Of a stretch of DNA of 64,000 bases, positions 2,798 to 60,555 are shown piece after piece. Position 1 is the first letter of the stretch. Each line of letters begins with the position of its first letter. Made by a program: the position numbers and the translations under genes. Below the pieces are notes generated by a model. It made no database searches. It was not told where the DNA came from and saw only the letters and a list, made by a program, of their open reading frames with translations. This stretch comes from Neoechinorhynchus agilis (lineage: Eukaryota; Animalia; Acanthocephala), in assembly GCA_051530055.1 (NCBI GenBank), contig CM121342.1, positions 4,091,489-4,155,488 on the forward strand, in the 5' to 3' direction.

Positions 2798-4885
2798 TTC
2801 CGACTCCGTCATCCACCTCTCCGACCCTGGCATCAACTCTAAACTCCGGATCCGTCATCCACTTCTTCGGATCCGTCATCCACTCCAATTCCGGATCCGT
2901 CATCCACCCCTCCGACCCTGGCATCAACTCTAAACTCCGGATCCGTCATCCATTGTATTCCTCCATTCCGACTCCGTCATCCACTCTCCCGAATTTGTCA
3001 TCCACTCCAATTCCGGATCCGTCATCCACCTCTTCGGATCCGTTATCCACCTCTCCAACGTATAGCTCGGATCGTTCCACTCGAATTCCGACTCCGTCAT
3101 CCCTTCAAACACCGGATCCGTCATCCACTCCAGCAAGACGCGTCCTCCATCCACCCCTCCGGATCCGTCCTCCATCCACCCCTCCGACTCCGTCATCCAC
3201 CTCTTCGGATCCGTCATCCACTCCAATTCCGGATCCGTCATCCACCTCTTCGGATCCGTCATCCACTCCGAATTCCGACTCCGTCATCCACCCCTCCGGA
3301 TCCGTCATCCACCTCTCCGAATCCGTCATCCACTCCAATTCCGGATCCGTCATCCACCTCTCCGACTCCGTCATCCACTCCTCCGGATCCGTCATCCACC
3401 TCTCCGACTCTGTCATCAACTCCAAATCCGGATCCGTCATCCACCTCTTCGGATCCGTCATCCACCCCTCCGGATCCGTCCTCATCCACCCCTCCGGTCC
3501 GTCATCCACCTCTCCAACCCCGTCATCCACTCTACGGATCCGTCATCCACTTCTTCGGATCCGTCATCCACTCCGAATTCCGACTCCGTCATCCACCTCT
3601 CCGACCCTGGCATCAACTCTAAACTCCGGATCCGTCATCCACCTCTTCGGATCCGTCATCCACTCCAATTCCGGATCCGTCATCCACCTCTCCGACCCTG
3701 GCATCAACTCTAAACTCCGGATCCGTCATCCACCTCTTCGGATCCGTCATCCACTTCTTCGGATTTGTCATTCACTCCGAATTCCGACTCCGTCATCCAC
3801 CTCTTCGGATCCGTCATCCACTCTAATTCCGGATCCGTCATCCACCTCTTCGGATCCGTCCCCTCCAATTGGTCCGTCATCCTCTGGCATCAACTCTAAA
3901 CTCCGGATCCGTCATCCACCTCTTCGGATCCGTCATCCACTTCTTCGGATTTGTCATTCACTCCGAATTCCGACTCCGTCATCCACTTCAAACTCCGGAT
4001 TTGTCATCCACTCCAATTCCGGATCCGTCATCCACCTCTCCGACCCTGTCATCCACTCTAAACTCCGGATCCGTCATCCACTTCTCCGGATCCGTCATCC
4101 ACTCCAAATTACAGAGACCCGTCCTCCATCCACCCCTCCGGATCCGTCATCCACCTCTCCGACTCTGGCATCCACTCCAATTCCGGATCCGTCATCCACC
4201 TCTCCGACCCTGGCATCAACTCTAAACTCCGGATCCGTCATCCACCTCTTCGGATTTGTCATCCACTCCAATTCGCCGTCTCCATCCATCGGATCCGTCA
4301 TCCATCTCCGACCTGGCATCACTCAATTCCGGATCCTCATCCACCTCTTCGGATCCGTCATCCACTTCTTCGGATTTGTCATTCACTCCGAATTCCGACT
4401 CCGTCATCCACTTCAAACTCCGAATTTGTCATCCACTCCAATTCCGGATCCGTCATCCACCTCTTCGGATCCGTTATCCACCTCTCCAACCCCGTCATCC
4501 ACTCCAGACTCCGGATCCGTCATCCACTCCAATTCCGACTTCGTCATCCACCTCTTCGCTCCGTCATCCACTTCAAACACCGGATCCGTCATCCACTCCA
4601 CATTGCAGAGACGCGTCCTCCATCCACCCCTCCGGATCCGTCCTCCATCCACCCCTCCGACTCCGTCATCCACCTCTCCGGATCCGTCCTCCATCCACCT
4701 CTTCGGATCCGTCATCCACTCCGAATTCCGACTCCGTCATCCACCCCTCCGGATCCGTCGTCCACCTCTCCGACTCCGTCATCCACTCCAATTCCGGATC
4801 CGCCATCCACCTCTCCGACTCCGTCATCCACCCCTCCGGATCCGTCATCCACCTCTCCGACTCCGTCATCCGCTCTAAACCCCGG
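2798..4885. repeat. GC-rich variant-repeat minisatellite (21/24/25-nt units, core ccgtcatccac)
   Basis: Interspersed units such as ggatccgtcatccacctcttc (21 nt), ggatccgtcatccactccaattcc (24 nt) and gaccctggcatcaactctaaactcc (25 nt). The + strand is strongly C-rich. It generates low-complexity ORFs on both strands. Confidence 0.95.
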
Positions 4886-13600: not shown

Positions 13601-16600
13601 TTACTTTCTCTTTTCTGATTAGCGAGGTATTTTTCGGATTTTTTTCAAAAAACGAAGGAAAGGTTTCTTTTAAACGGAAAACGTCCATCAACTTTACTTC
13701 TCTTTTCTGATTAGCGAGGTATTTTTCGGATTTTTTTCAAAAAACGAAGGAAAGGTTTTTTTTAAACGGAAAACGTCCATAAACTTTTACCTCCTCCTGA
13801 TTAGCGAGGTATTTTTCGATTTTTTTCAAAAAATTCGAAGCGAAAGCGTTTCTTTAAACGCATTTTGAAGAGGTATTTTTCGGATTTTTTTCAAAAAACG
13901 AAGGAAAGGTTTCTTTTAAACGGAAAAGGTCTATAAACTTTACTTCTCTTTCTGATTAGCGAGGTATTTTTCGGATTTTTTTAAAAAAAAGGAAGGAAGG
14001 TTTCTTTTAAACGGAAAACGTCCATCAACTTTACTTTTCTGATTAGGTTTTTTCGGATTTTTTTTCCAAAAAAAACGAAGGAAAGGTTTCTTTTAAACGG
14101 AAAACGTCCATCAACTTTACTTCTCTTTTCTGATTAGCGAGGTATTTTTCGGATTTTTTTTAAAAAACGAAGGAAAGGTTTCTTTTAAACGGAAAACGTC
14201 CATAAACTTTACTTCTCTTTTCTGATTAGCGAGGTATTTTTTTTTCAATTTTAAAAAACGATTTTTTTTCAAAAAAACTTTACTTCTCCTTTCAGATGAG
14301 TATTTTTCGGATTTTTTTAAAAAAAGGAAGGAAGGTTTCTTTTTTAAACGGAAAACGTCCATCAAACTTCTACTTTTCTGATTAGCGAGGTATTTTTCGA
14401 TTTTTTTCAAAAACGAAGGAAAGGTTTCTTTTAAACGGAAAACGTCCATTAACTTTACTTTTCTCTTTCACGATTAGCGAGGTATTTTTCGATTTTTTTC
14501 AAAAAACGAAGGAAAGGTTTCTTTTTTCCAAATCGGAAAAAGGTCTATAAACTTTACTTCTTCTGATTAGCGAGGTATTTTTCGGATTTTTTTCAAAAAA
14601 AGAAGGAAAGGTTTCTTTTAAACGGAAAACGTCCATCAACTTTACTTCTCTTTTCTGATTAGCGAGGTATTTTTTCGGATTTTTTTCAAAAAAGGAAGGA
14701 AATTTCGTTTCGCTTTTAAAACGGAAAACGTCCATTAACTTTACTCTCTTTTCTGATTAGAGGTATTTTTCGGATTTTTTTCAAAAAAAGAAGGAAAGGT
14801 TTCTTTTAAACGGAAAACGTCCATCAACTTTACTTCTCTTTTCTGATTAGCGAGGTATTTTTCGGATTTTTTCAAAAAACGAAGGAAAGGTTTCTTTTAA
14901 ACGGAAAAGGTCCATAACTTTACTTCTCTTTTCTGATTAGCGAGGTATTTTTCGGATTTTTTTCAAAAAACGAAGGAAAGGTTTCTTTTAAACGGAAAAC
15001 GTCCATAAACTTTACTTCTCTTTTCTGATTAGCGAGGTATTTTTCGGATTTTTTTTTCAAAAAACGAAGGAAGGTTTCTTTTAAACGGAAAACGTCCATC
15101 AACTTTACTTCTCGATCCATTAACTTTACTTCTCTTCTCTTTTCTGATTAGCGAGGTATTTTTCGGATTTTTTTCAAAAAACGGAAGGAAGGTTTCTTTT
15201 AAACGGAAAACGTCCATTAACTTTACTTCTCTTTTCTGATTAGCGAGGTATTTTTCGATTTTTTTCAAAAAACGAAGGATTTTTTTTTTAAACGGAAAAA
15301 TAAACTTTACTTCTCTTTTCTGATTAGCGAGGTATTTTTCGGATTTTTTTCCAAAAAAGGAATCGGAAAAGGTCTATAAACTTTTAAACGGAAAAATTAA
15401 CTTCTCTTTGGGAAAGGTTTCTTTTAAACGGAAAACGTCCATTAACTTTACTTTCTTTTCTGATTAGCGAGGCATTTTTTGGATTTTTTTTCAAAAAACG
15501 AAGGAAAGGTTTCTTTTAAACGGAAAACGTCCATTAACTTTACTTCTCTTTTCTGATTAGCGAGGTATTTTTCGGATTTTTTTCAAAAAACGAAGGAAAG
15601 GTTTCTTTTAAACGGAAAACGTCTATAAACTTTACTTCTCTTTTCTGATTAGCGAGGTATTTTTCGGATTTTTTTCCTTTTAAAAAAAGGAAGGAAAGGT
15701 TTCTTTTAAACGGAAAACGTCCATCAACTTTACTTCTCTTTTCTGATTAGCGAGGTATTTTTCGGATTTTTTTCAAAAAACGAAGGAAAGGTTTCTTTTA
15801 AACGGAAAACGTCCATAAACTTTACTTCTCTTTTCTGATTAGCGAGGTATTTTTCGGATTTTTTTCAAAAAAAAAAGGAAGGTTTCTTTTAAACGGAAAA
15901 CGTCCATCAACTTTACTTCTCTTTTCTGATTAGCGAGGTATTTTTCGGATTTTTTTTTCAAAAAACGAAGGAAAGGTTTCTTTTAAACGGAAAACGTCCA
16001 TTAACTTTACTTCTCTTTTCTGATTAGCGAGGTATTTTTCGGATTTTTTTCAAAAAACGAAGGAAAGGTTTCTTTTAAACGGAAAACGTCCATCAACTTT
16101 ACTTCTCTTTTCTGATTAGCGAGGTATTTTTCGGATTTTTTTCAAAAAACGAAGGAAAGGTTTCTTTTAAACGGAAAACGTCCATTAACTTTACTTCTCT
16201 TTTCTGATTAGCGAGGTATTTTTCGGATTTTTTTCAAAAAAACGAAGGAAGGGTTTCTTTTAAACGGAAAACGTCCATTAACTTTACTTCTCTTTTCTGA
16301 TTAGCGAGGTATTTTTCGGATTTTTTTAAACAAAAAAACGAAGGAGAGGTTTCTTTTAAACGGAAAACGTCCATAAACTTTACTTCTCTTTTCTGATTAG
16401 CGAGGTATTTTTCGGATTTTTTTCAAAAAAAGGAAGGAAACGGTTTCTTTTAAACGGAAAACGTCCATCAACTTTACTTCTCTTTTCTGATTAGCGAGGT
16501 ATTTTTCGGATTTTTTTCAAAAAACGAAGGAAAGGTTTCTTTTAAACGGAAAACGTCCATTAACTTTACTTCTCTTTTCTGATTAGCGAGGTATTTTTCG

Positions 16601-17570
16601 GATTTTTTTCCAAAAAACGAAACTTTACTTTTTCTGAAAGGTTTCTTTTAAACGGAAAACGTCCATTAACTTTACTTCTCTTTTCTGATTAGCGAGGTAT
16701 TTTTCGGATTTTTTTCAAAAAACGAAGGAGAGGTTTCTTTTAAACGGAAAAGGTCTATAAACTTTACTTCTCTTTTCTGATTAGCGAGGTATTTTTCGGA
16801 TTTTTTTCCAAAAAAAGGAAGGAAGGTCCATTAACTTTACTTCTTTTTCTGAAAGGTATTTTTCGGAAAAAAACGAAGGAAAGGTTTCTTTTAAACGGAA
16901 AACGTTTTAACTTTACTTCTTTCTGATTAGCGAGGTATTTTTCGGATTTTTTTCAAAAAACGAAGGAGAGGTTTCTTTTAAACGGAAAAGGTCTATAAAC
17001 TTTACTTCTCTTTTCTGATTAGCGAGGTATTTTTCGGATTTTTTTCCAAAAAAGGAAGGAAGGTTTTCTTTTAAACGGAAAACGTCCATTAACTTTACTT
17101 CTCTTTTCTGATTAGCGAGGTATTTTTCGGATTTTTTTCAAAAAACGAAGGAAAGGTTTCTTTTAAACGGAAAACGTCCATTAACTTTACTTCTCTTTTC
17201 TGATTAGCGAGGTATTTTTCGGATTTTTTTCAAAAAACGGATTTTTTTAAACGGAAAAGGTCTATAAACGTTCAAAAAAGCGAAGGATTTTTTTCAAAAA
17301 ACGGTTTCTTTTAAACGGAAAACGTCCATTAACTTTACTTCTCTTTTCTGATTAGCGAGGTATTTTTCGGATTTTTTTCAAAAAAGGAAGGAAAGGTTTC
17401 TTTTAAACGGAAAACGTCCATTAACTTTACTTCTCTTTTCTCTGATTAGCGAGGTATTTTTCGGATTTTTTTCAAAAAACGAAGGAAAGGTTTCTTTTAA
17501 ACGGAAAAGGTCCATAAACTTTACTTCTCTTCGCAAATTAGCAAGGTATTTCTCAATTTTTTTCAAAATC
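7691..17570. repeat. Tandem satellite, ~92-bp unit, ~107 copies
   Basis: Unit aactttacttctcttttctgattagcgaggtatttttcggatttttttcaaaaaacgaaggaaaggtttcttttaaacggaaaacgtccatt. Period 92 (e.g. ttttctga at 9121 and 9213). Two variants (aacgtccat / aaggtctat) often alternate. Confidence 0.98.
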
Positions 17571-27317: not shown

Positions 27318-30300
27318 ATTTTATTGAAATATTTCTAAACAGAAGGAAGCCTCATCCGGCCAATAAAATATCTTTTATTCGGCTAATTTAAATCACACCA
27401 AAACCTACAAATGTTTTATTGAAATATTTCAAAAGAAGAAGCTTCATCCTGGTCACCTAAAAGGGTTTTAGTTTTTCTATCTAATAAAATATCTTTTATT
27501 CGGCTAATTTAAATCACACCAAAACCTACAAATGTTTTATTGAAATATTTCAAAAGAAGAAGCTTCATCCTGGTCACCTAAAAGGGTTTTAGTTTTTCTA
27601 TCTAATAAAATATCTTTTATTCGGCTAATTTAAATCACACCAAAACCTACAAATGTTTTATTGAAATATTTCAAAAGAAGAAGCTTCGTCCTGGTCACCT
27701 AAAAGGGTTTTAGTTTTTCTATCTAATAAAATATCTTTTATTCGGCTAATTTAAATCACACCAAAACCTACAAATGTTTTATTGAAATATTTCAAAAGAA
27801 GAAGCTTCGTCCTGGTCACCTAAAAGGGTTTTAGTTTTTCTATCTAATAAAATATCTTTTATTCGGCTAATTTAAATCACACCAAAACCTACAAATGTTT
27901 TATTGAAATATTCAAAAGAAGAAGCTTCGTCCTGGTCACCTAAAAGGGTTTTAGTTTTTCTATCTAATAAAATATCTTTTATTCGGCTAATTTAAATCAC
28001 ACCAAAACCTACAAATGTTTTATTGAAATATTTCAAAAGAAGAAGCTTCGTCCTGGTCACCTAAAAGGGTTTTAGTTTTTCTATCTAATAAAATATCTTT
28101 TATTCGGCTAATTTAAATCACACCAAAACCTACAAATGTTTTATTGAAATATTTCAAAAGAAGAAGCTTCATCCTGGTCACCTAAAAGGGTTTTAGTTTT
28201 TCTATCTAATAAAATATCTTTTATTCGGCTAATTTAAATCACACCAAAACCTACAAATGTTTTATTGAAATATTTCAAAAGAAGAAGCTTCATGCTGGTC
28301 ACCTAAAAGGGTTTTAGTTTTTCTATCTAATAAAATATCTTTTATTCGGCTAATTTAAATCACACCAAAACCTACAAATGTTTTATTGAAATATTTCAAA
28401 AGAAGAAGCTTCGTCCTGGTCACCTAAAAGGGTTTTAGTTTTTCTATCTAATAAAATATCTTTTATTCGGCTAATTTAAATCACACCAAAACCTACAAAT
28501 GTTTTATTGAAATATTTCAAAAGAAGAAGCTTCTCCTGGTCACCTAAAAAAAATCACACCAAAACCTAAAATGTTTTATTGAAATATTTCAAAAGAAGAA
28601 GCTTCATCCTGGTCACCTAAAAGGGTTTTAGTTTTTCTATCTAATAAAATATCTTTTATTCGGCTAATTTAAATCACACCAAAACCTACAAATGTTTTAT
28701 TGAAATATTTCAAAAGAAGAAGCTTCATCCTGGTCACCTAAAAGGGTTTTAGTTTTTCTATCTAATAAAATATCTTTTATTCGGCTAATTTAAATCACAC
28801 CAAAACCTACAAATGTTTTATTGAAATATTTCAAAAGAAGAAGCTTCATCCTGGTCACCTAAAAGGGTTTTAGTTTTTCTATCTAATAAAATATCTTTTA
28901 TTCGGCTAATTTAAATCACACCAAAACCTACAAATGTTTTATTGAAATATTTCAAAAGAAGAAGCTTCGTCCTGGTCACCTAAAAGGGTTTTAGTTTTTC
29001 TATCTAATAAAATATCTTTTATTCGGCTAATTTAAATCACACCAAAACCTACAAATGTTTTATTGAAATATTTCAAAAGAAGAAGCTTCGTCCTGGTCAC
29101 CTAAAAGGGTTTTAGTTTTTCTATCTAATAAAATATCTTTTATTCGGCTAATTTAAATCACACCAAACCTACAAATGTTTTATTGAAATATTTCAAAAGA
29201 AGAAGCTTCGTCCTGGTCACCTAAAAGGGTTTTAGTTTTTCTATCTAATAAAATATCTTTTATTCGGCTAATTTAAATCACACCAAAACCTACAAATGTT
29301 TTATTGAAATATTTCAAAAGAAGAAGCTTCGTCCTGGTCACCTAAAAGGGTTTTAGTTTTTCTATCTAATAAAATATCTTTTATTCGGCTAATTTAAATC
29401 ACACCAAAACCTACAAATGTTTTATTGAAATATTTCAAAAGAAGAAGCTTCGTCCTGGTCACCTAAAAGGGTTTTAGTTTTTCTATCTAATAAAATATCT
29501 TTTATTCGGCTAATTTAAATCACACCAAAACCTACAAATGTTTTATTGAAATATTTCAAAAGAAGAAGCTTCATCCTGGTCACCTAAAAGGGTTTTAGTT
29601 TTTCTATCTAATAAAATATCTTTTATTCGGCTAATTTAAATCACACCAAAACCTACAAATGTTTTATTGAAATATTTCAAAAGAAGAAGCTTCATCCTGG
29701 TCACCTAAAAGGGTTTTAGTTTTTCTATCTAATAAAATATCTTTTATTCGGCTAATTTAAATCACACCAAAACCTACAAATGTTTTATTGAAATATTTCA
29801 AAAGAAGAAGCTTCCATGCCTGGTCACCTAAAAGGGTTTTAGTTTTTCTATCTAATAAAATATCTTTTATTCGGCTAATTTAAATCACACCAAAACCTAC
29901 AAATGTTTTATTGAAATATTTCAAAAGAAGAAGCTTCGTCCTGGTCACCTAAAAGGGTTTTAGTTTTTCTATCTAATAAAATATCTTTTATTCGGCTAAT
30001 TTAAATCACACCAAAACCTACAAATGTTTTATTGAAATATTTCAAAAGAAGAAGCTTCGTCCTGGTCACCTAAAAGGGTTTTAGTTTTTCTATCTAATAA
30101 AATATCTTTTATTCGGCTAATTTAAATCACACCAAAACCTACAAATGTTTTATTGAAATATTTCAAAAGAAGAAGCTTCGTCCTGGTCACCTAAAAGGGT
30201 TTTAGTTTTTCTATCTAATAAAATATCTTTTATTCGGCTAATTTAAATCACACCAAAACCTACAAATGTTTTATTGAAATATTTCAAAAGAAGAAGCTTC

Positions 30301-30958
30301 GTCCTGGTCACCTAAAAGGGTTTTAGTTTTTCTATCTAATAAAATATCTTTTATTCGGCTAATTTAAATCACACCAAAACCTACAAATGTTTTATTGAAA
30401 TATTTCAAAAGAAGAAGCTTCGTCCTGGTCACCTAAAAGGGTTTTAGTTTTTCTATCTAATAAAATATCTTTTATTCGGCTAATTTAAATCACACCAAAA
30501 CCTACAAATGTTTTATTGAAATATTTCAAAAGAAGAAGCTTCGTCCTGGTCACCTAAAAGGGTTTTAGTTTTTCTATCTAATAAAATATCTTTTATTCGG
30601 CTAATTTAAATCACACCAAAACCTACAAATGTTTTATTGAAATATTTCAAAAGAAGAAGCTTCGTCCTGGTCACCTAAAAGGGTTTTAGTTTTTCTATCT
30701 AATAAAATATCTTTTATTCGGCTAATTTAAATCACACCAAAACCTACAAATGTTTTATTGAAATATTTCAAAAGAAGAAGCTTCGTCCTGGTCACCTAAA
30801 AGGGTTTTAGTTTTTCTATCTAATAAAATATCTTTTATTCGGCTAATTTAAATCACACCAAAACCTACAAATGTTTTATTGAAATATTTCAAAAGAAGAA
30901 GCTTCGTCCTGGTCACCTAAAAGGGTTTTAGTTTTTCTATCTAATAAAATATCTTTTA
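27318..30958. repeat. Tandem satellite, 121-bp unit, ~30 copies, very homogeneous
   Basis: ggtcacc recurs at 27451, 27572 and 27693. The main variant is aagcttcAtcct vs aagcttcGtcct. Confidence 0.98.
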
Positions 30959-31040
30959 TCCGGAGGATTATGATAACATCACAACTGCAACTCTATCATC
31001 CTGAAGGATTTTCTCTTGACGATTATACATCCATTCGTAG

Positions 31041-43400: not shown

Positions 43401-44852
43401 AGAAGGTTTGTGGAGAATGTCTTTTAAATTGTTTCTCGGGTGCTCACATTGTTGCAAGTGCGAAAATACAAAAGTGCTGAGCGCTACTCATATTATTGAG
43501 TCGCTTGTGTGGAGCAGAAGGCGTGAGTTGTCAGGCGCTGCTGGTGGTTAAAATTGACATTCGTTTTGAGCCGGTTTCAATAGGAAGTTAATAAGGGAAT
43601 AGGCGAGACAAATAGCATTTATACCCTTTCTCGGTTTCGAACGGGATGAAGTGCTCCTTGGTGATGTTTAAGCGAATTCGCAAGTTGTTTAAGGTTAATT
43701 TAGACACTCAAAAATTATAAAAATCTCATTGAAAGACCACGATTTTATTGTTGTTGTTGTTTAGGGGCCAGCTAGTCACACCGATGAGAAGTCTGATCAA
43801 AAACTCTCTGATAATGAGTCAGAACTACGTGGTGGTGGTGGTGGTGGTGGATGGGTGAGTTTTAACTCCTCAACCGCCGTTAGCGTACGTTGTTTTGTTT
43901 GCAGGGTCTAGGATTTGTCGAGTCGGGAGATTTAAAGACTGTTCAGATTCCAAATGATATTACAGGTATTTGATTCTAATTTCGTTGTGGTCAAAACTGC
44001 TTATTAATAGAATTGGAATCAGAGGATCCGAACGATCCACGAGTGAGGCCTATCGTTATTGGATCACCAAGTGTTATATTGATTGAAAATGAAAACGACG
44101 ATATGTATTTAGGGATCAGTCTCGTAGGTGGCGTTGGGACTCCAATGGGTGCAATATTGATCCATGATATCTTCGAAAACGGATCTGCACATAAAGACGG
44201 ACGACTGATGGTTGGTGACCAGATTTTAGAAGTTAACGGAGTTGATGTAACAAAGTGCTCGAGTGAAGAATGCATGGAGCTAATTAGAGAAAGCATCAGC
44301 ACAATAGAGCTTAAAGTAATTCGCGGCCCAAATGAAGTAAGTTCATTGGAAAACGAAGACAAACTGGAAAAGATCAGCGTTGAATTGATGAAAAAACAAA
44401 ATCGAGGACTTGGTCTTAGCATAACGAAGCTCCAAAGTGGAAGAGGCGCTTATATTTCAGGAATTATTGAAGGTGGATGTGCTGAGAAGGACGGTCGTCT
44501 TATACCGGGCGATGTACTTCTCGAAGTTAATGGACGGAAAATATCGAAACTTGCATATGATGACATTGTATATTTGTTGAAGACACTCCCTTATGGGAAA
44601 GTAAATTTGAACATTGGCCGATTAAAACCAAGCCTCAATTGCAATGAAAACGTGACCACGACCGGAGCATCCAACATTACGACCACCGACTCAAGTTCAT
44701 TTCATCCTGTAAATATGCTAAGAGCAGCAGCCAGCAGTATGAAACAGCGCCATTTACGGTCTCGCTCAGCTCCTAGCCAATTCACTAGACATTTGTCTAG
44801 TCGGCTACGAAGAAGGAAAACCACTAATGTGACTCTTTTACAAGATACATAA
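37471..44852 (+). CDS. MPDZ: Multiple PDZ domain protein (MPDZ/MUPP1-PATJ family), at least 9 PDZ domains, many short introns; 5' end unresolved
   Basis: Family-diagnostic motifs: LNTEWTEIEEIQL..GGRSTGVVVK (PDZ2); WKRIFGSNYDVL..GLRLEGTV..HY (PDZ4); GLGLSFLEYQD..PGDRL (PDZ5); AQAKNILRRASLI (PDZ6); LGLSLVGN..LYGKCHANA (PDZ8); GGVGTPMGAILIHDIFENG (PDZ10); KKQNRGLGLSI (PDZ11). GT-AG introns include 37756-37806, 37945-37989, 38230-38285 and 38383-38860. First unambiguous exon starts at 37807. Confidence 0.9.
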
Positions 44853-47027
44853 ACCTTCCATCGTTTTGTATTATCATTACTATAAATAAAACCAGGATGA
44901 AGTTTTAATCAATTGATTTTAGACATTAGGAATCGAAGGAAATTTATTAGAATTTTAGGTTTTTGAATCTAGTCGGCTACGAAGAAGGAAAACCATTAAT
45001 GTGACTCTTTTACTGGATATGTAAACCTTCCATCGTTTTGTATTATCATTACAATAAATAAAACCAGGATGAAGTTTTAATCAATTGATTTTAGACATTA
45101 GAATCGAAGGAACTTTATTAGAATTTAAGGTTTTTGAATCTAGTCGGCTACGAAGAAGGAAAACCATTAATGTGACTCTTTTACTGGATATTGTAAACCT
45201 TCCATCGTTTTGTATTTTCATTACTATAAATAAAACCAGGATGAAGTTTTAATCAATTGATTTTAGACACTAGGAATCGAAGGAACTTTATTAGAATTTA
45301 AGGTTTTTCAATCTAGTCGGCTACGAAGAAGGAAAACCATTAATGTGACTCTTTTACTGGATAATGTAAACCTTCCATCGTTTTGTACATTACTATAAAT
45401 AAAACCAGGATGAAGTTTTAATCAATTGATTTTAGACACTAAGAATCGAAGGAACTTTATTAGAATTTAAGGTTTTTGAATCTAGTCGGCTACGAAGAAG
45501 GAAAACCATTAATGTGACTCTTTTACTGGATAATGTAAACCTTCCATCGTTTTGTATTTTCATTACTATAAATAAAACCAGGATGAAGTTTTAATCAATT
45601 GATTTTAGACACTAAGAATCGAAGGAACTTTATTAGAATTTAAGGTTTTTGAATCTAGTCGGCTACGAAGAAGGAAAACCATTAATGTGACTCTTTTACT
45701 GGATATTGTAAACCTTCCATCGTTTTGTATTTTCATTACTATAAATAAAACCAGGATGAAGTTTTAATCAATTGATTTTAGACACTACGAATCGAAGGAA
45801 CTTTATTAGAATTTAAGGTTTTTGAATCTAGTCGGCTACGAAGAAGGAAAACCATTAATGTGACTCTTTTACTGGATATTGTAAACCTTCCATCGTTTTG
45901 TATTATCATTACTATAAATAAAACCAGGATGAAGTTTTAATCAATTGATTTTGGACACTAGGAATCGAAGGAACTTTATTAGAATTTAAGGTTTTTGAAT
46001 CTAGTCGGCTACGAAGAAGGAAAACCATTAATGTGACTCTTTTACTGGATATTGTAAACCTTCCATCGTTTTTATTTTCATTACTATAAATAAAACCAGG
46101 TAAAGTTTTAATCAATTGATTTTAGACACTAGAATCGAAGGAACTTTATTAGAATTTAAGGTTTTTGAATCTAGTCGGCTACGAAGAAGGAAAACCATTA
46201 ATGTGACTCTTTTACTGGATATTGTAAACCTTCCATCGTTTTGTATTATCATTACTATAAATAAAACCAGGATAAAGTTTTAATCAATTGATTTTAGACA
46301 CTAAGAATCGAAGGAACTTTATTAGAATTTAAGGTTTTTGAATCTAGTCGGCTACGAAGAAGGAAAACCATTAATGTGACTCTTTTACTGGATATTGTAA
46401 ACCTTCCATCGTTTTGTATTATCATTACTATAAATAAAACCAGGATGAAGTTTTAATCAATTGATTTTAGACACTAAGAATCGAAGGAACTTTATTAGAA
46501 TTTAAGGTTTTTGAATCTAGTCGGCTACGAAGAAGGAAAACCATTAATGTGACTCTTTTACTGGATATTGTAAACCTTCCATCGTTTTGTATTTTCATTA
46601 CTATAAATAAAACCAGGATAAAGTTTTAATCAATTGATTTTAGACACTAAGAATCGAAGGAACTTTATTAGAATTTAAGGTTTTTGAATCTAGTCGGCTA
46701 CGAAGAAGGAAAACCATTAATGTGACTCTTTTACTGGATATTGTAAACCTTCCATCGTTTTGTATTATTTAATAAAATAAAACCAGGATGAAGTTTTAAT
46801 CAATTGATTTTGGACACTAAGAATCGAAGGAACTTTATTAGAATTTAAGGTTTTTGAATCTAGTCGGCTACGAAGAAGGAAAACCATTAATGTGACTCTT
46901 TTACTGGATATTGTAAACCTTCCATCGTTTTGTATTTTCATTACTATAAATAAAACCAGGATAAAGTTTTAATCAATTGATTTTAGACATTAGGAATCGA
47001 AGGAACTTTATTAGAATTTAAGGTTTT
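44796..47027. repeat. Tandem array, ~172-bp unit, 13 copies; first copy overlaps the MPDZ stop codon
   Basis: tctagtcggctacgaagaagg at 44796, 44968, 45139, 45312, 45481, 45654, 45827, 46000, 46170, 46343, 46516, 46689 and 46859. Confidence 0.97.
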
Positions 47028-47436
47028 TAGTCTCCTCTTAGCAATGTGATCGAAATCCACTTTAATTATTAATCTTATTATTCAAAATGGGAATGAAACG
47101 ATAAAGACGTTTCATCGTTGTGTGAAAAGGCACTAATTGAAATTTTCAATTTTCGCCGTTCTCGATTTCTAGGATCAAAATGTAATCTCTGACGGCCGAG
47201 TTTTCATTGTCCATTTTAGTAAACAAATTTCGTGTGCTGTTGAGTAAACGTAGATTTTAAAGGAAGCAAAGAAATTTAGATTCTTACATTTTCATCTGTT
47301 ACATAAACGATTTTCCAAGCAGTTTAGAATTTAATTATCTGAGATATTTTACAGTGTTTCCGTGGCGGTATTTCGATCCACCAGCAAAACTTTTTTACAA
47401 ACACTCAATAAACTTATCTGTTTTTTGATGGTCACG

Positions 47437-47920: not shown

Positions 47921-49654
47921 ATGTTTTCGTCGCAACAATTTCCGTTTTACTCAGTTTCAGACGTTCTCTTCATTGCATTTATCCTTTCCGTTACAATGAA
48001 ACGAATCCTACTTTTGATTTTATTGTTATTAGTTTTCCACTTTGGAATTTCTTATTTCTATCGCTCAAACCGAACTATTAATAAATCCGTTTTTAAGCGT
48101 ATTGATAAAATACGTCTTTTTGAAGCGAAGACTTACTTGAAGAATGCTTCATTGAGTCCTAAAAAGGAATACAATTCACCTGAGGGACGCTACGTTGTTA
48201 TTATTGTATCGAGTAGGCGACAGAAAGTTCAATACCAATATCTAACTCAAACCATAGCATCGGCTCATAAATGCCTTTCAATGCTTCAAAAAATTAACTT
48301 TGAGATCTGGGTGGTCTTAGATGGTTCCGATGGCAATGAAGTACTCCAGGGACTGCCATCTCTACCATACAATGTAAATGAATGATCTCAAACGTCGCAG
48401 AATATAATCTCTTGGACCTCTAACGAATTGCGTTACTTTATTTTTAAAAAAATAATAATTTCTTTTTCGATTTAATATGTCCAGTTTAGAGCGTCTCTTT
48501 TTTAGAATCAGCAAACTAAGATTCGAAATGTTTTTAATAAAATTTTATTTACTAGGTGAATAATGACGGAAAAATTATAAGATTTTTTTTTGTTAAATCC
48601 GATATTGCGAAATTAATAATGATTATTGTTGAATTAGCGGACTTGATAAATTGTAAAGAAAGTGCTCTTGGTGATGAGAAGTTATAAGCAACCTAAGAAG
48701 GTTCTACAATTAATTTCTATTTCCCATAAAAGTCTTTTTTAAGCGCTGTCTCGAATGCTTTCAGTATATTCCATATCCATCAATTATTAAAATGGTTTCG
48801 AACTAAATAGGAAACGTTCAAACTGCATAATTATTTAAATCTTAAACACCGGATACCCGAAATTGAAATTTTTTTAGGAAGTTCTACAATTTGGTTTTTT
48901 TAAGGAGGATAAAATATAATTGCGGCCTTATGAGACCACTCATAAAAATTATGTTTCATTAAATATCTCGTCTGGATCCTTTTCATTACACAAAAAGGAA
49001 CTTCTTCTTTACATTGCGACTCTCCGTTTTGCTGCTTCAAAGATCGATAAACGCAAAACTGAAGCATTGTTGATATTGGAAGATGATGTTATATCGACTT
49101 TTTCAAATTGGATACACGTGAACCACCTCGTAATGAGAAGAAGGATCTTTGAAGAAAATCCAAATCTTATAATGGTACGATTATTTTATCCGGAAAAGTA
49201 TTGCAACTACTCAATGGAACTTCATTGCATACTTGAATTAATGGCTACTATAGTCCTTGTCGCTATGGTTCTATTCAAATACTTTGGAAAATATTTTTCA
49301 ACATTCATTGTGTTAATGATGGTTGATTTGTTTATTTTAACTGGTAGACCGAGGATGGAAAAACTAAGATATATTCATTCCGCTTTGTTGAGATTGAGAT
49401 TATCTCCAGGATGTTGCACACCAGCGATTCTAATGAGACCCGACTCAGGACTCATGTTGAAGTTAGCACATTTCATGAAGGATTCTATAAACTTAAGCAT
49501 TCCTAAGGATTTGGTAATCGACAAGTTTACTCAGCCTTGTTCAGGATCTTTAACCGTTGAACCAAATCTTTTCTACCACATTGGATATGTATCCACTCTT
49601 GGAACGATACGATCTTTGACTGAGTTTTTAAATAATCCGGCTCATATTTTTTAA
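47921..49654 (+). CDS. PGAP4: GPI-N-acetylgalactosamine transferase PGAP4/TMEM246 homolog; exons ~47921(or 47996)-48373 and ~48935-49654
   Basis: Ordered motifs match the PGAP4 family: TM-HFGISYFY, YVVIIVSSRRQ..YLTQ, LILEDD, RLFYPEK, GR..LR..PGCCTPAILM, KD, VEPNLFYHIGYVSTL. Donor gtaaat at 48374. Phase-0 acceptor at 48934 is tentative. Confidence 0.88.
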
Positions 49655-51691
49655 TAAAAAAATTGCAGTTGCGATTTAAACTCATTTCTAAACGGAACGA
49701 TACGATCTTTGACTGAGTTTTTTAATAATCCAGCTCATATTTTTTAATAAAAAAATTGCAGTTGTGATTTAAACTCATTTCTAAACGGAACGATACGATC
49801 TTTGACTGAGTTTTTAAATAATCCGGCTCATATTTTTTAATAAAAAAATTGCAGTTGCGATTTAAACTCATTTCTAAACGGAACGATCTTTGACTGAGTT
49901 TTTAAATAATCCGGCTCATATTTTTTAATAAAAAAATTGCAGTTGCGATTTAAACTCATTTCTAAACGGAACGATACGATCTTTGACTGAGTTTTTAAAT
50001 AATCCGGCTCATATTTTTTAATAAAAAAATTGCAGTTGCGATTTAAACTCATTTCTAAACGAACGATACGATCTTTGACTGATTTTTTAAATAATCCGGC
50101 TCATATTTTTTAATAAAAAAATTGCAGTTGCGATTTAAACTCATTTCTAAACGGAACGATCTTTGACTGAGTTTTTAAATAATCCGGCTCATATTTTTTA
50201 ATAAAAAAATTGCAGTTGCGATTTAAACTCATTTCTAAACGGAACGATCTTTGACTGAGTTTTTAAATAATCCGGCTCATATTTTTTAATAAAAAAATTG
50301 CAGTTGCGATTTAAACTCATTTCTAAACGGAACGATACGATCTTTGACTGAGTTTTTAAATAATCCGGCTCATATTTTTTAATAAAAAAATTGCAGTTGC
50401 GATTTAAACTCATTTCTAAACGGAACGATCTTTGACTGAGTTTTTAAATAATCCGGCTCATATTTTTTAATAAAAAAATTGCAGTTGCGATTTAAACTCA
50501 TTTCTAAACGGAACGATACGATCTTTGACTGAGTTTTTAAATAATCCGGCTCATATTTTTTAATAAAAAAATTGCAGTTGCGATTTAAACTCATTTCTAA
50601 ACGGAACGATCTTTGACTGAGTTTTTAAATAATCCGGCTCATATTTTTTAATAAAAAAATTGCAGTTGCGATTTAAACTCATTTCTAAACGGAACGATAC
50701 GATCTTTGACTGAGTTTTTAAATAATCCGGCTCATATTTTTTAATAAAAAAATTGCAGTTGCGATTTAAACTCATTTCTAAACGAACGATCTTTGACTGA
50801 GTTTTTAAATAATCCGGCTCATATTTTTTAATAAAAAAATTGCAGTTGCGATTTAAACTCATTTCTAAACGGAACGATACGATCTTTGACTGAGTTTTTA
50901 AATAATCCGGCTCATATTTTTTAATAAAAAATTGCAGTTGCGATTTAAACTCATTTCTAAACGGAACGATCTTTGACTGAGTTTTTAAATAATCCGGCTC
51001 ATATTTTTTAATAAAAAAATTGCAGTTGCGATTTAAACTCATTTCTAAACGGAACGATACGATCTTTGACTGAGTTTTTAAATAATCCGGCTCATATTTT
51101 TTAATAAAAAAATTGCAGTTGCGATTTAAACTCATTTCTAAACGAACGATACGATCTTTGACTGAGTTTTTAAATAATCCGGCTCATATTTTTTAATAAA
51201 AAAATTGCAGTTGCGATTTAAACTCATTTCTAAACGGAACGATCTTTGACTGAGTTTTTAAATAATCCGGCTCATATTTTTTAATAAAAAAATTGCAGTT
51301 GCGATTTAAACTCATTTCTAAACGGAACGATACGATCTTTGACTGAGTTTTTAAATAATCCGGCTCATATTTTTTAATAAAAAAATTGCAGTTGCGATTT
51401 AAACTCATTTCTAAACGACGAACGATCTTTGACTGAGTTTTTAAATAATCCGGCTCATATTTTTTAATAAAAAAATTGCAGTTGCGATTTAAACTCATTT
51501 CTAAACGGAACGATACGATCTTTGACTGAGTTTTTAAATAATCCGGCTCATATTTTTTAATAAAAAAATTGCAGTTGCGATTTAAACTCATTTCTAAACG
51601 GAACGATACGATCTTTGACTGAGTTTTTAAATAATCCGGCTCATATTTTTTAATAAAAAAATTGCAGTTGTGATTTAAACTCATTTCTAAA
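49601..51691. repeat. Tandem array of 93/88-bp units (~23 copies, 181-bp dimer); first copy overlaps the PGAP4 stop codon
   Basis: ggaacgat at 49601, 49694, 49787, 49880 and 49968. Identical spurious ORFs at 50198, 50379 and 50560 are offset by 181 bp. Confidence 0.97.
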
Positions 51692-52600
51692 CATAGATTT
51701 TTTTTGTCTAGATTGTTTGAATGGTTAATTTCTGACTTTTTATACTTTTAATTCTTAAGCCATAAACAAGGACTTGAAATATTAGTCAATTCGAGGGAAA
51801 ATCTCTATCGGAATGGTAAATTTTGACTTGTAATGAAAACAAGAGAAGGCGAGGTTTCCTCTCTTTCCAAATATTTCGCTAACAATAAAACGATTTTCAC
51901 CACAAGTTAAAACTTCTCAGTTACATATCTCGAATAATAAAAAAAGAACATCAAAATTAGATATTCATATCCTTAAGAACTACGAGTCTGAAAATCACAT
52001 TTCTTGAGTTTTCATTAAAAAGTAAAACTTGACAGTTAAACGCTTTCCGAGAACGACAGTTTGTTTCTTTACACAATGAAGCCGAACTCCAAAACGAATT
52101 AAAGTAGCGATAATCTTTCAAATTCAAGTCAAAAAAAGGGAACCTAATGAACGAACAGAAATTAATCTGATTTGTTTTCTAATATGAAATTGGAACGTCT
52201 TTAATCTTAAAGATTGTTCATGTTCAAAAAGTTAAGAAAGTCTTGCCGATATCCTCTATTTCACGAAAATTGATTAAATTATAAATGATTGATTTTTTGT
52301 AAATCGAAAGGTCGATGATTTAATGGAAATATGCATTCTCGGTCACATTCCTGATCGGAATTTCGGTTTGTTCAAATTAAAGGGCAAGTAAATTATCAGT
52401 TTGATGATTCTTAATAGCAACGCTTAAATCGATCAATGGAGCTTTTTAAACTTCCCTTAAAAGTTCAGCCATTTGCGATGATGACGGTTCGATGAAAAAG
52501 AAACTCAGCTGAATTGTAGAATTCTACTCATTTTCATTGTTCATTCTTGGTGGATGCCTTAAAGCGGAAATTCGTTCACTTATCCTTTAAGGGTTTTTTT

Positions 52601-57217: not shown

Positions 57218-57454
57218 ATTATCTGCCGCTCATTTGTCGCCTATCGACTAAATGACCTTAATCATCTTTATCAAACAATCCATCGTACAAAATGTACCGA
57301 AAAAACTCATAGAGAAAATAAAAGCTCTTTCAGAAGCAAAATTACATTGTTTTTATTTTGGACGTGCCAAACGCCATTTGTCGTAGTCTCTAATTTTTAA
57401 TATCGATATTTTTTGGAGCAAAAAATGCGCTTTTTTTCAATTTATATTGCTTTT

Positions 57455-59342
57455 GCTTCGGGGCTAAGGCCTCAGCACCTAAAGGACTTTACAACTGGTG
57501 AAGCAGCTTTCTCCTTAGAAAGGTCGCTTTCTCGGTTAGTCGACCGCCTGACTGGAGAGGATTTGAATCTCGTCGTAAAAAAACCTATTTTTCGAAGAAT
57601 CATTACATGCCCTCACAAAAAAAGAAGGTGGGATTCGTCCAATCGCCGTATCACGCCGACTTGCAGGAAAAATTCTGAAAACCGGACAGCAGCTTCGTCC
57701 AGTCCAACTGGGTTGCTGCGGGGCGGAAGCTATTGTCCACTCGCTCCGAAACTTCACTGCAAGGAGCTCAGAGTCGTGCTTGATTCTTAAGTGTGATTTT
57801 TCAGAATGCCTTTAACTCTCTCAATAGAGAAACCATGTTCTGCGCAATTAGGGATCACGCACCAGAAGCCTTCCAGTATTTTCTCAATGCCTTCGCGACG
57901 GCGACTCCTTTGCTTTTCGAAGACCACCTCATTTGGTCCGAAAGAGGAGTGCAGCAAGGAGATCCCCTCGGTCCAATCGCATTCTCCCTAACAGTAAATC
58001 CAATAGCGCATTCTCTCGATTCCTGCTTCAACGCTTGGTACTTGGATGACGCTACGCTCGGAGGTGATCCCTCCGTTGTACTGCGCGATTTGGAGACGCT
58101 GATTAGGGAGACCTCGAAGATGGGCATTGAGCTCAATGCTGGAAAATGTGAGCTCCTTGTATTGAATATTGGAGACGCCGCCAAAGTCAAAGAACTAATG
58201 GCTGGGTTCGAGGCCGTAGCTCCAGGCCTGAAACTCGTGACTCGGGAACAACTCAGCCTCCTGGGCAGTTGCGTCTTCGATTCAAATGTGGAAGATGAGA
58301 TCGGCCATATCATACCGAAACTTTCGTTGCTGTGCGATAGGGTGAGCGCTCTCTGGACTCATGAAGCGTTATTTCTGATAAAGAACGCGCTCTTCATCCC
58401 CAAATTATTGTACAAGGTTCGCACAGCAACATTTTTCAAACATAAGGAAGGATTGGCAAAGCTCGACGACAAGGTGAGGGCTTGTCTCGAGCGTATTTTA
58501 AATGTCCAGCTCCCAGATGAGGCGTGGCGACAAGCTACTTTGCCAGTATCATCTGGGGGATTGGGAATTCGTTTGAGGGGAGCCTATCAGTCTCGAAGAA
58601 CATTTTGAAGGAAAAGTTGTGTCTTGACCGGGATTTCGTGGTGGCGGTTGAAGAATGGTGCCAGCAGACCGGCGCTAACCATGTTTCCGTGAATGGCCTC
58701 AGACAGTCGATCTGGGACGGAAATCTTGTCGCGAGAGCTCACAGCTCTCTACTTTCCGGTTTTCGCGATGGGGTCGTCCGAGCTAGATTGTTCACGAGAA
58801 TCTGGGGCGTGGTTGGAGGCTATTCCTCTGGCATCTGTGGGAACTCTTCTCACTGATGAGGTAACGAGGATCGCAGTATCCTTAAGACTTGGTCTCCCGA
58901 TATGCACGCCCCATCGCTGTCGATGTGGGTCTTTGGTTGATGCTTTCGGGCGACACGGTCTCGTCTGCCGAAAGTCAGGAGGAAGGTTTTCACGCCATTC
59001 TGAAATCAATAACGCAATTTCTCGGGCGTTGAGAACATCGAACTTCCCCAACATCCTGGAACCCGCCCACCTTTGTCGACTAGACGGCCGTAGGCCCGAT
59101 GGAATTTCGGTCTTCCCGTGGCGGGAGGGCAAATGCCTTCTCTGGGACGCCACGTCCCTCGCAGCCAGCAACATCCGCTACTCCCTCGAAATCGCTGGTG
59201 GTGCCGCCAGTGCAGCGGAAGGGAGGAAAATACGGAAATATCTTCACTTATCGAGGGCTCACTATTTTGTCCCCTTCGGAGTAGTGGAGCGTTTGGCAGC
59301 TCGGCACTCGCGACAAAATATCTCGCCGGCAGTACAACGAGG
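57455..59342 (+). mobile_element. Decayed, 5'-truncated non-LTR retrotransposon with RT and C-terminal CCHC + restriction-like endonuclease (CRE-clade-like)
   Basis: GLRPQHLKD; ALTKKEGGIRPIAV..RRL; LKCDFQNAFNS (frameshifted); QQGDPLGP; WYLDD; GGLGIR; CRCG..D..G.H..C...RH; DGRRPDG..PW..GKCLLWDAT; terminal ISPAVQRG. At least three frameshifts and apparent small in-frame deletions. Confidence 0.88.
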
Positions 59343-59344
59343 CC

Positions 59345-60555
59345 CTAGGAAGGATAGAAGCTAAGATTTTGGGGACGGTGGTGACAAAAATCTTTTATTA
59401 ATTCTTTTTTTTCGATTAAATGCAAATTTACAATTGGTTGAAGTGACGCAGCGGAAATTCATTCTTTTAAATATTTTTTTTTCGAAAACAGCCACATTCT
59501 AATAGAACTTACGTAAATTTATTGAGACTATCGTCATCATCGACTAATTCGCAAGTCACACTTCCTACATTAGCACATTTGTGACCATCGTCATTTCCCA
59601 TTTTCCCATTTAACTTATTAATCTTTTCTGCCAATAACAATATAGTTGAACAAAAGTCTGGATCATTTAGTTTTTCTTTAACAACGTCTTTACATTGATC
59701 GCTTTTGCTGCACGAATCGATACTTGCCATAAAGTCATTAGTCAATCGTGGTGCTGCTGCTCGGTAATGATGATATCGTTCATTTCTCTGACTTCCAGAA
59801 TGTATCGAATCGAACTGATAATGATGAATATCGCTATTTTGTCTCTTGACTTTACTTTGATCGTCGTAAATTCGTTCAATGTATCCTGAATTTACTCTTG
59901 ATTTACTCATTGCAGTTTGCACTGCTTTAGTCGTATAATTCTTATATTGAACTTTAGAGAGTTGTGTTCGTGGGGATGCAATGGAACAAAGACTACTATT
60001 ATCTTCGATTGAATGGTCGGAATTATCGGGAATATCGGTATAAAACCGATCTTTCGTTTCATTTCCTTTAAATCTAGGATGCCTTCGTCGTCTTTGGACA
60101 GGAACGTAGACTTCAGTGGCACCGTTTCGCTGTAAAACCCTAGGTTGTGCATCTCGTGGATCGTTTGAATCAAGTTCAAAATAATGAACGCTATGAACGA
60201 TTTTGCCTCCACATGGCTTCTCATTTCTTCTCAACTCACTTAATTTCCCAATATTTAAACCAAACATGGGATTCATTATTGTGTTTTCGTTTGCTGGAAT
60301 CCGGTGTCCAACATTGAACCGTTGCGGCTGCTGAGGCAAGGGTTCAATGTGTTGGTAGATGGTTTTATGTTGGGACGAGAACATCGCAAGATGAGTTTCG
60401 TGGAGTTGCTTGCTTTTAAGCTACTCGCTTTTTTCTAACGTGAGGTCACATGACTTTTCCTTTAGTAGTCTTCGGAGGTTAATCGTCGTTTGACAATGCG
60501 AATTTGCCCTCGTGTCTTTAATCGAGGTGTTCATTTCTAGTCCCAGCTTCTCGAG
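59345..60555 (-). CDS. Orphan multi-exon gene (exons 60555-60455, 60412-59513, 59463-59432, 59391-59345); 5' end unresolved
   Basis: The 291-codon ORF 60384-59509 ends exactly at a gtaagt donor. Introns of 42, 49 and 40 nt keep the frame to a TAG at 59347-59345. No domain recognised. Confidence 0.65.

What the first reader, a model, noticed from the sequence alone, without database searches (positions are those of the whole stretch)
49601..51691. Second independent case: array built from the last 17 codons, stop and AATAAA of PGAP4
Seen: the monomer starts right after the conserved HIGYVSTL motif. It reads GTIRSLTEFLNNPAHIF*, with AATAAA (49653-49658) overlapping the TAA, plus ~39 nt of flank. 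About 23 near-identical copies follow, and the coding copy matches the consensus. The start point (54 nt before the end of the stop) parallels the MPDZ array (57 nt) although the sequences are unrelated. Inference: either a recent amplification, or concerted evolution that homogenises a coding C-terminus.
Basis: partly seen in the sequence, partly recalled or inferred. Interest (0 to 1): 0.7.

Follow-up and report, generated by a model that had tools for sequence, protein, structure and literature searches.

The report
Young tandem array copied from gene end
In the thorny-headed worm Neoechinorhynchus agilis, the last 93 bases of a PGAP4-like gene (17 codons, the stop, the poly(A) signal and 39 bases beyond) have been copied head to tail 23 times; the gene stays intact, and this is an ordinary kind of repeat in an unusually clear, young state.

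Summary
TRF finds 23.0 head-to-tail copies at 49601-51692. A 36-mer from the unit occurs 23 times against 0 expected.

Unit 1 is the true 3' end of a two-exon PGAP4/TMEM246-like gene of Neoechinorhynchus agilis (scaffold CM121342.1). It is identical to the 93-nt consensus.

The array is gene-derived, not a captured satellite. All 130 relatives that carry the HIGxxSxL motif continue past it (median 12 residues). In 67 of them an [E/D]F motif sits at tail position 8-10, and the query has EF at 8.

The array is very young or freshly homogenised. There are 5 substitutions in 2092 nt. It has 14 long (93 nt) and 9 short (88 nt) units, mostly as 181-nt long-short pairs, which fits repeated unequal exchange or slippage. 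A short unit in first place would frameshift the protein.

Half the window is tandem arrays of about ten unrelated monomers. The PDZ-gene array (173 nt) has the same layout but is older, and its coding copy has diverged. The 54/57-nt parallel is probably coincidence, since the distances to AATAAA are 52 and 89 nt.

The most likely reading is a neutral local amplification, tolerated because the first copy keeps the reading frame and the poly(A) signal.

The parts
47996..48373 (+). Exon 1 of the PGAP4/TMEM246-like gene (126 codons; N-terminal transmembrane helix)
   Evidence: The ORF and a GTAAAT donor are visible in the sequence. The exon matches NCBI protein P0001, ACOME3_005517.
48998..49654 (+). 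Last exon (218 codons plus stop). It carries the EDD motif, the tandem hydrophobic helices, the GCC.PA motif and the HIGYVSTL motif.
   Evidence: and alignment A1. An alternative acceptor at 48934 would add 21 codons; this was not resolved.
49577..49600 (+). Codons for HIGYVSTL, the last family-wide motif, immediately left of the array
   Evidence: H320, G322 and S325 are invariant in A1, and I321, S326 and L327 nearly so. The motif is found in 131 of 163 family proteins collected.
49601..49693 (+). Unit 1. This is the functional copy: 17 codons (GTIRSLTEFLNNPAHIF), TAA at 49652-49654, AATAAA at 49653-49658, and 39 nt that probably hold the cleavage site.
   Evidence: It is identical to the 93-nt consensus. 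The EF motif is conserved at this tail position in relatives. The position of the cleavage site is inferred, not shown.
49694..51692 (+). 22 further copies, which are non-coding because they lie beyond the stop and the poly(A) signal. Together with unit 1 the array has 14 long and 9 short units, mostly as 181-nt long-short pairs. Each copy carries its own TAA and AATAAA.
51693..51760 (+). Unique right flank. The junction is sharp, with no decayed copies, no microhomology and no terminal repeats.
44796..47028 (+). Sister case: a 173-nt array of 13 copies that starts 57 nt before the end of the stop of the upstream PDZ-domain gene. It is older, and its coding copy differs from the consensus at 11 positions.

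Best explanation
A 93-bp stretch spanning the end of the gene was duplicated in tandem at its own locus and then expanded to 23 copies. The stretch holds the last 51 coding bases, the stop, the overlapping AATAAA and 39 bases downstream.

A tandem duplication leaves the first copy joined to the gene body, so the reading frame, the stop and the poly(A) signal are untouched. The mRNA most likely ends inside unit 1 (inferred). The other 22 copies are then untranscribed or barely transcribed spacer.

After the first duplications, one unit lost one ACGAT of the ACGATACGAT direct repeat by slippage, which produced the 88-nt short form. Long-short pairs, and at least one block of about five units, were then multiplied by unequal sister-chromatid or homologue exchange, or by replication slippage (inferred from the unit order).

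The array is young, and I read it as a selectively neutral by-product. This genome seems generally prone to building locus-specific tandem arrays between genes. The array also carries a small hazard: an exchange that puts a short unit in first place would frameshift the tail to ...GTIFD*.
For: Shown:
- The array and its coordinates.
- Unit 1 is in frame with a 227-codon open frame and equals the consensus.
- The gene's tail is ancestral. 130 of 130 motif-bearing relatives have tails (median 12 aa). 72 of 130 carry [E/D]F, 67 of them at tail position 8-10, and the query has it at 8. Shuffled tails give a mean of 19.7 and a maximum of 32. The long form is therefore the original, and the coding part of the monomer comes from the gene.
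- Youth: 5 substitutions in 2092 nt, none shared by more than two units, with sharp edges and no decayed copies.
- Turnover by multi-unit steps: the 181-nt period scores better than the 93-nt one (97% vs 95%). Units 9-16 are four perfect long-short pairs. The order L S L L' S recurs at units 3-7 and 15-19.
- The monomer occurs nowhere else in the window. The nine to ten arrays in the window are unrelated to each other and cover 50.1% of it.
- The older 173-nt array at the PDZ gene has the same layout, with a diverged coding copy and edge units that share variants. This is what unequal exchange in the interior predicts.
- Other genes in the window also have AATAAA or ATTAAA within 10-32 nt of the stop, so very short 3' UTRs are normal here.
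Against: - Only one assembly, made from a pool of about 50 worms, is available (PMC12690905). Copy number, unit order and single-base indels are not independently verified.
- No RNA data were available, so the poly(A) site and the silence of units 2-23 are inferred.
- Units 2 and 23 share a C-to-T change at a CpG. This could mean the edges keep an older state and that the 3' part of unit 1 was overwritten by an interior variant, which would be some homogenisation of unit 1. It could equally be two independent CpG transitions.
- Neutrality is assumed, not tested.
Confidence: 0.75

Rival explanations
1. The array is old and is kept uniform by concerted evolution that includes the coding copy. 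Under this reading the C-terminus of the protein co-evolves with 22 non-coding copies, and selection on unit 1 filters what can spread.
For: Unit 1 is identical to the consensus while unit 2 is the most diverged. The edge units 2 and 23 share a variant. The long-short pair structure proves repeated exchange.
Against: No substitution has spread through the array; only one 5-nt slippage variant has, and it has not entered unit 1. In the neighbouring older PDZ array the coding copy is not homogenised and differs from the consensus at 11 positions. There are no decayed edge copies.
Confidence: 0.12
2. Read-through capture: an older satellite lay downstream, and the gene lost its original stop and now ends inside the first satellite unit.
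For: Nothing positive. It is raised only because the coding copy equals the consensus.
Against: The tail is homologous to the tails of distant relatives: it has the same length class and EF at the family's usual position. The monomer is absent from the rest of the window. No protein in the 5.8-billion-protein collection resembles the array's longest ORF.
Confidence: 0.02
3. The array is useful, or is made by a process tied to gene 3' ends. Examples would be breaks at transcription-termination or R-loop sites that seed arrays, which then act as stacked poly(A)/terminator or spacer modules in a compact genome.
For: Two unrelated arrays in one window start 54 and 57 nt before the end of a stop codon. 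Each of the 23 units carries AATAAA. Arrays fill most of the intergenic space but stop 80-380 nt short of the start codons they border.
Against: Other arrays in the window lie between divergent promoters or far from gene ends. Relative to AATAAA the two starts differ, at 52 vs 89 nt. The next gene on the same strand is 6.6 kb away, so there is no obvious need for a fail-safe terminator. With n = 2 the coincidence is about 4% post hoc. The unit shows no significant fold and no known RNA family.
Confidence: 0.08
4. Assembly artefact: the array or its size was created by the hybrid long-read assembler or the gap closer.
For: The assembly is ONT-based, built from pooled worms, and was gap-closed with raw long reads (PMC12690905). 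Several differences between units are single-base G or A run-length changes, typical of nanopore error.
Against: At 2.1 kb the array fits well inside single reads of at least 5 kb. The ordered long-short structure and the unit-specific substitutions are not what collapse or mis-joining produces. There are no N runs. Nine other arrays with clean structure lie in the same window.
Confidence: 0.03

Closest known systems
Locus-specific minisatellite or young satellite array with higher-order repeats, formed by tandem duplication and expanded by unequal crossing-over or replication slippage
   Same: It has head-to-tail copies of a unit of about 90 bp. A two-unit higher-order period is present. The interior is homogenised and the edge units are slightly diverged. 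It arose from local unique sequence.
   Different: The founding segment straddles a gene's end: coding bases, the stop and the poly(A) signal. The first unit is therefore a working part of a gene. Copy-number polymorphism, a defining trait of minisatellites, could not be tested.
Euchromatic satellite arrays near genes in Tribolium castaneum (PMC3411249; bioRxiv 10.1101/2023.04.24.538079)
   Same: Both are short tandem arrays embedded in gene-rich DNA, close to or overlapping gene ends, that arose in bursts.
   Different: The Tribolium families are dispersed at many loci and related to the major satellites. Here each array in the window has its own monomer, and this one is copied from the adjacent gene.
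Partial tandem gene duplication of the 3' end
   Same: The duplication breakpoint lies inside the last exon, and the upstream copy stays intact and functional.
   Different: The unit is only 93 bp and has been amplified 23-fold. No copy other than the first has a promoter or the rest of a reading frame.
D4Z4/DUX4 macrosatellite (PMC12376486)
   Same: The relationship between a tandem array and a poly(A) signal decides which unit can give a stable mRNA.
   Different: The layout is inverted. In D4Z4 every unit carries the ORF and only the distal flank supplies the poly(A) signal. Here every unit carries a poly(A) signal and only the proximal unit is joined to the gene. The unit sizes differ about 35-fold.

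Membership tests
PGAP4 / TMEM246 (GPI GalNAc transferase, GT-A fold split by tandem transmembrane helices) | Significant sequence similarity to proteins named PGAP4/TMEM246 | tested here: met
   phmmer found 197 relatives at E<=1e-3, the best at 1.6e-16. A sponge relative, P0002, hits the query at 1.3e-11, and its own family includes 'transmembrane protein 246-like' of Amphimedon, P0009. TMEM246 = PGAP4 according to PMC5785973. The similarity is distant (about 25-37% identity), and the query itself has no Pfam hit.
PGAP4 / TMEM246 (GPI GalNAc transferase, GT-A fold split by tandem transmembrane helices) | EDD (DXD-like) donor-binding motif | tested here: met
   The query has ILEDDV. D155 and D156 are invariant in the 17-sequence alignment A1. 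The motif is described as E211-D212-D213 in the human enzyme (PMC5785973).
PGAP4 / TMEM246 (GPI GalNAc transferase, GT-A fold split by tandem transmembrane helices) | Three transmembrane helices, two of them in tandem inside the catalytic domain | tested here: inconclusive
   Hydrophobic stretches lie at residues about 3-20 and about 200-240. The AF2 model predicts helices 2-17, 201-222 and 224-241. However, the model is of low confidence (mean pLDDT 54), and no topology predictor was run.
PGAP4 / TMEM246 (GPI GalNAc transferase, GT-A fold split by tandem transmembrane helices) | GalNAc transfer to GPI anchors | not testable with these tools
   This needs a biochemical or knockout assay.
Minisatellite / young satellite DNA array | Head-to-tail copies of one unit, far beyond chance | tested here: met
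   TRF reports 23.0 copies with score 3820. There are 23 matches of the 36-mer against 0 in shuffles.
Minisatellite / young satellite DNA array | Higher-order repeat structure and interior homogenisation from unequal exchange | tested here: met
   The 181-nt period gives 97% matches against 95% for the 93-nt period. Long-short pairs are present, a five-unit order recurs, and the only substitutions are in units 2, 6 and 23.
Minisatellite / young satellite DNA array | Copy-number variation between individuals (minisatellite) or many loci and high genomic abundance (satellite) | not testable with these tools
   Only this window of the genome could be read. Within it the monomer is confined to this one array.
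Gene end captured from a pre-existing satellite (read-through capture) | Relatives of the protein end at or near the last conserved motif, so the tail is novel | tested here: not met
   130 of 130 relatives with the HIGxxSxL motif have tails of 3-39 aa (median 12). The EF motif is conserved at the query's position.
Gene end captured from a pre-existing satellite (read-through capture) | The monomer exists elsewhere as an older repeat | tested here: inconclusive
   It is absent from the other 62 kb of the window, from JGI metagenome contigs and from the protein collection. The rest of the N. agilis genome could not be searched.

The most novel reading that the evidence does not exclude
N. agilis may have a recurrent process tied to gene 3' ends, for example breaks where transcription terminates, that seeds tandem arrays a few dozen bases upstream of stop codons. 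This would turn gene ends into stacks of poly(A)/terminator units. It could explain why much of the intergenic DNA of this very small (46 Mb) genome is made of young, locus-specific arrays. A further possibility is that the coding tail of such genes is then dragged along by array homogenisation.
Probability: 0.08. Interest if true: 0.7.

Novelty: new member of a known kind. Interest (0 to 1): 0.33.

Why it matters
This is a clean snapshot of how a tandem repeat is born from unique, functional sequence. The founding segment, both breakpoints, the ancestral unit (still under selection as a protein tail), the first length variant and the first higher-order period can all be read directly.

With the older PDZ-gene array 5 kb away, it gives two time points of the same process.

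It also flags two practical points for this genome:
- Half of this window of a 46-Mb parasite genome is locus-specific tandem arrays, which the genome paper does not discuss.
- Arrays that overlap gene ends can mislead 3'-end annotation and read mapping. They also create a standing risk of frameshifted C-termini through unequal exchange.

It changes no general principle.

Tried and rejected
- Pfam scan of the gene product: no family at E<=0.1. The identity therefore rests on phmmer relatives.
- Names of ten representative relatives: none carried a name.
- AlphaFold2 on the 17-sequence alignment, run to see whether the tail packs into the fold: mean pLDDT 54, tail below 50. It was uninformative, and no fold search was run.
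- Protein search with the longest minus-strand ORF of the array (191 aa), run to find other loci, species or transcripts: no hit. Those minus-strand ORFs are by-products of the repeat, and the 88-nt units break the frame.
- Exact scan of JGI metagenome contigs for the 36-mer: 0 matches. This is a weak negative because the host genome is not in that collection.
- Rfam over the whole window: 0 families. tRNA scan: 0. The unit is therefore not a SINE or RNA-gene derivative.
- Folding of one unit (RNA) and of one long-short pair (DNA): z = -1.2 and -1.5, not different from shuffles. A hairpin-driven model was dropped.
- Search for terminal inverted repeats, target-site duplications or microhomology at the two junctions: none. 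A transposon-borne array was dropped.
- All-against-all comparison of the window's array monomers, looking for a shared motif: only 10-17-nt AT-rich chance matches.
- The bacterial promoter/terminator scan is irrelevant to this eukaryote.
- A MAFFT-based divergence count mis-aligned the 5-nt indel. It was replaced by pairwise alignment.
Full report
WHAT IS THERE

The window is AT-rich eukaryotic DNA. The gene next to the array matches, over its full length, one NCBI protein: hypothetical protein ACOME3_005517 of Neoechinorhynchus agilis, a thorny-headed worm (Acanthocephala). It differs from my first gene model only by 21 extra residues from an alternative acceptor. The exact protein maps to scaffold CM121342.1 of GCA_051530055.1, and window position 37996 equals record position 4129484. 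The assembly is a 46.2-Mb hybrid ONT/Illumina draft made from a pool of about 50 worms. Its paper does not discuss tandem repeats (PMC12690905).

THE OBSERVATION

TRF reports an array at 49601-51692 with period 93, 23.0 copies and 95% matches. The same array read with period 181 gives 97% matches. A 36-nt core occurs 23 times on the + strand and never in 100 shuffles.

The frame reads ...HIGYVSTL | GTIRSLTEFLNNPAHIF*. The array starts at the G codon (49601). TAA lies at 49652-49654 and AATAAA at 49653-49658. The unit is therefore 54 nt of gene end plus 39 nt of downstream flank.

Cutting the array into units and aligning each to unit 1 gives these results:
- Unit 1 equals the consensus.
- 14 units are long (92-93 nt).
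- 9 units are short (87-90 nt), having one ACGAT instead of ACGATACGAT.
- Only 5 substitutions occur in 2092 nt: three in unit 2, one in unit 6 and one in unit 23.

Corrections to the finding are minor. There are 22 copies after the coding one, not 23. The array ends at 51692. The copies come in two lengths.

THE GENE

The annotated model has two exons, 47996-48373 and 48998-49654, giving 344 aa.

Pfam gives nothing for the query. An exhaustive phmmer search finds 197 relatives. All are distant, and the next best after the protein itself has E = 1.6e-16 and 35% identity.

A sponge relative leads to a family that includes 'transmembrane protein 246-like' of Amphimedon, and some members hit PF04666. 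TMEM246 is PGAP4, a Golgi GPI-GalNAc transferase with three transmembrane helices and an EDD motif (PMC5785973).

The query keeps several family features:
- EDD, with D155 and D156 invariant.
- The motifs YPEK, GCC.PA and HIG..S.L.
- Hydrophobic helices at the expected places (low confidence).

'PGAP4-like' is therefore a fair name, resting on distant homology.

GENE-DERIVED OR CAPTURED?

Of the family proteins collected, 131 (the query and 130 relatives) carry the H[ILVMF]G..S[STA][ILVMF] motif. In those 130 relatives:
- All continue past the motif, by 3-39 residues (median 12).
- 72 have [E/D]F in the tail.
- 67 have it at tail position 8-10.

The query has EF at position 8. Shuffled tails give a mean of 19.7 and at most 32 such cases. 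In the 17-sequence alignment E335, F336 and L337 are invariant.

The tail is therefore an ancestral part of the protein. The coding half of the monomer came from the gene, and the long unit is the original form. A short unit in first place would read GGA ACG ATC TTT GAC TGA, which is GTIFD*, and would lose the EF motif.

The monomer has no other copy in the window, diverged or not. Read-through capture is rejected.

AGE AND DYNAMICS

Divergence from the consensus is 0.24% by substitutions, and no substitution is shared by more than two units. The edges are sharp, with no decayed copies outside, no microhomology and no terminal repeats.

The only variant that has spread is the 5-nt slippage deletion. 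It now alternates with the long form: units 9-16 are four perfect long-short pairs. The order L S L L' S occurs twice, at units 3-7 and 15-19. This is the signature of repeated multi-unit unequal exchange or slippage. A rolling-circle burst from a 181-nt dimer cannot be excluded.

Units 2 and 23 share a C-to-T change at a CpG. This is either two independent CpG transitions or an older state kept at the edges. In the second case the non-coding 3' part of unit 1 has been overwritten from the interior.

The 173-nt array at the PDZ gene offers a comparison. Its coding unit differs from the consensus at 11 positions. Edge units 1, 2 and 13 share variants, and the interior is uniform. That array is older, and its coding copy has not been homogenised.

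Together these points favour recent amplification for the PGAP4 array, with ongoing exchange in the interior. Long-term concerted evolution that includes the coding copy is possible but unsupported.

CONTEXT

Tandem arrays cover 50.1% of the window. There are about ten arrays, with periods of 231, 91/21, 92, 121, 187, 173, 102, 93, 159 and 135 nt. Their monomers are unrelated to each other.

They sit in every kind of intergenic setting. One lies between the 5' ends of two divergent genes: the 121-nt array ends 78 nt before the ATG at 31041. The arrays stop about 80-380 nt short of the start codons they border.

Only the 173-nt and 93-nt arrays have a long open frame running into their left edge, of 272 and 227 codons.

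The simplest reading is that this genome readily makes local arrays, and selection removes those that damage promoters or reading frames. An array whose left breakpoint falls in the last exon survives because the first copy is complete.

THE 54/57-NT PARALLEL

Measured from the poly(A) hexamers, the two starts are 52 and 89 nt away. A uniform-breakpoint model gives about 4% for so close a match, judged after the fact on two cases. No known DNA-level process measures distance from a stop codon. I treat the parallel as coincidence until a genome-wide survey says otherwise.

FUNCTION

Other genes in the window have AATAAA or ATTAAA 10-32 nt after the stop, so very short 3' UTRs are usual here. 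The PGAP4-like mRNA most likely ends inside unit 1 (inferred).

Nothing suggests a role for units 2-23:
- No RNA family or tRNA was found.
- Folding is no better than for shuffled sequence.
- The minus-strand ORFs are broken by the short units and have no relatives.
- The next gene on the same strand is 6.6 kb away.

A stack of 23 poly(A) signals could act as a fail-safe terminator, but that is speculation.

VERDICT

The finding is real and correctly read. It is a young, gene-derived, locus-specific tandem array. It belongs to a known kind (a minisatellite or nascent satellite formed by tandem duplication and unequal exchange), in an unusually legible state and in a little-studied phylum. It is of moderate interest on its own. 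The array-rich architecture of this small genome is the more notable lead.

Limits: one assembly, no reads, no RNA data, and no access to the rest of the genome or to congeners.

Noticed in passing
window 1-64000: About half the window (50.1%) consists of some ten tandem arrays with mutually unrelated monomers, with periods of 231, 91/21, 92, 121, 187, 173, 102, 93, 159 and 135 nt. The genome is only 46.2 Mb, and its paper does not mention tandem repeats.
   Followed up: partly
window 44796-47028: A 173-nt array of 13 copies starts 57 nt before the end of the stop of the PDZ-domain gene. The coding copy differs from the consensus at 11 positions, and in the consensus the stop codon is lost. 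Edge units 1, 2 and 13 share variants. Whether that gene's tail is ancestral was not tested.
   Followed up: partly
window 7709-17568: A 92-nt array of nearly 10 kb, with several sub-blocks of differing identity (71-97%) and higher-order periods of 182-467 nt. It is the largest array in the window.
   Followed up: no
window 27362-30963: A 121-nt array (99% identity, about 30 copies, with a 363-nt super-period) fills the space between the 5' ends of a minus-strand Ig/FN3 gene and a plus-strand EF-hand ORF. It ends 78 nt before the ATG at 31041. Read on the minus strand, the unit contains a short frame ending in TAA overlapped by AATAAA, but no gene runs into it. I judged this to be chance.
   Followed up: partly
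window 2740-4878: A GC-richer region of 21/45/91-nt repeats is open for 712 codons on the + strand. It is Ser/Pro/Thr-rich and looks mucin-like, and long ORFs are present on the minus strand too. It may be a repetitive coding gene.
   Followed up: no
window 57413-59364: A GC-rich block (46%) holds ORFs that look like a fragment of a non-LTR retrotransposon reverse transcriptase. It lies between the clathrin-adaptor small-chain gene and a minus-strand 291-aa gene.
   Followed up: no
window 48374-48997: The annotated intron of the PGAP4-like gene could end 63 nt earlier, at an AG at 48933-48934. That would add 21 in-frame codons (TTHKNYVSLNISSGSFSLHKK) in a region where the annotated protein is shorter than its relatives.
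   Followed up: partly
window 49527-51684, minus strand: ORFs of up to 191 aa run through the array on the minus strand (MSLNRNCNFFIKKYEPDYLKTQSKIV...). They are produced by the 93-nt (31-codon) period, are interrupted by the 88-nt units, and have no relatives in the protein collection.
   Followed up: yes
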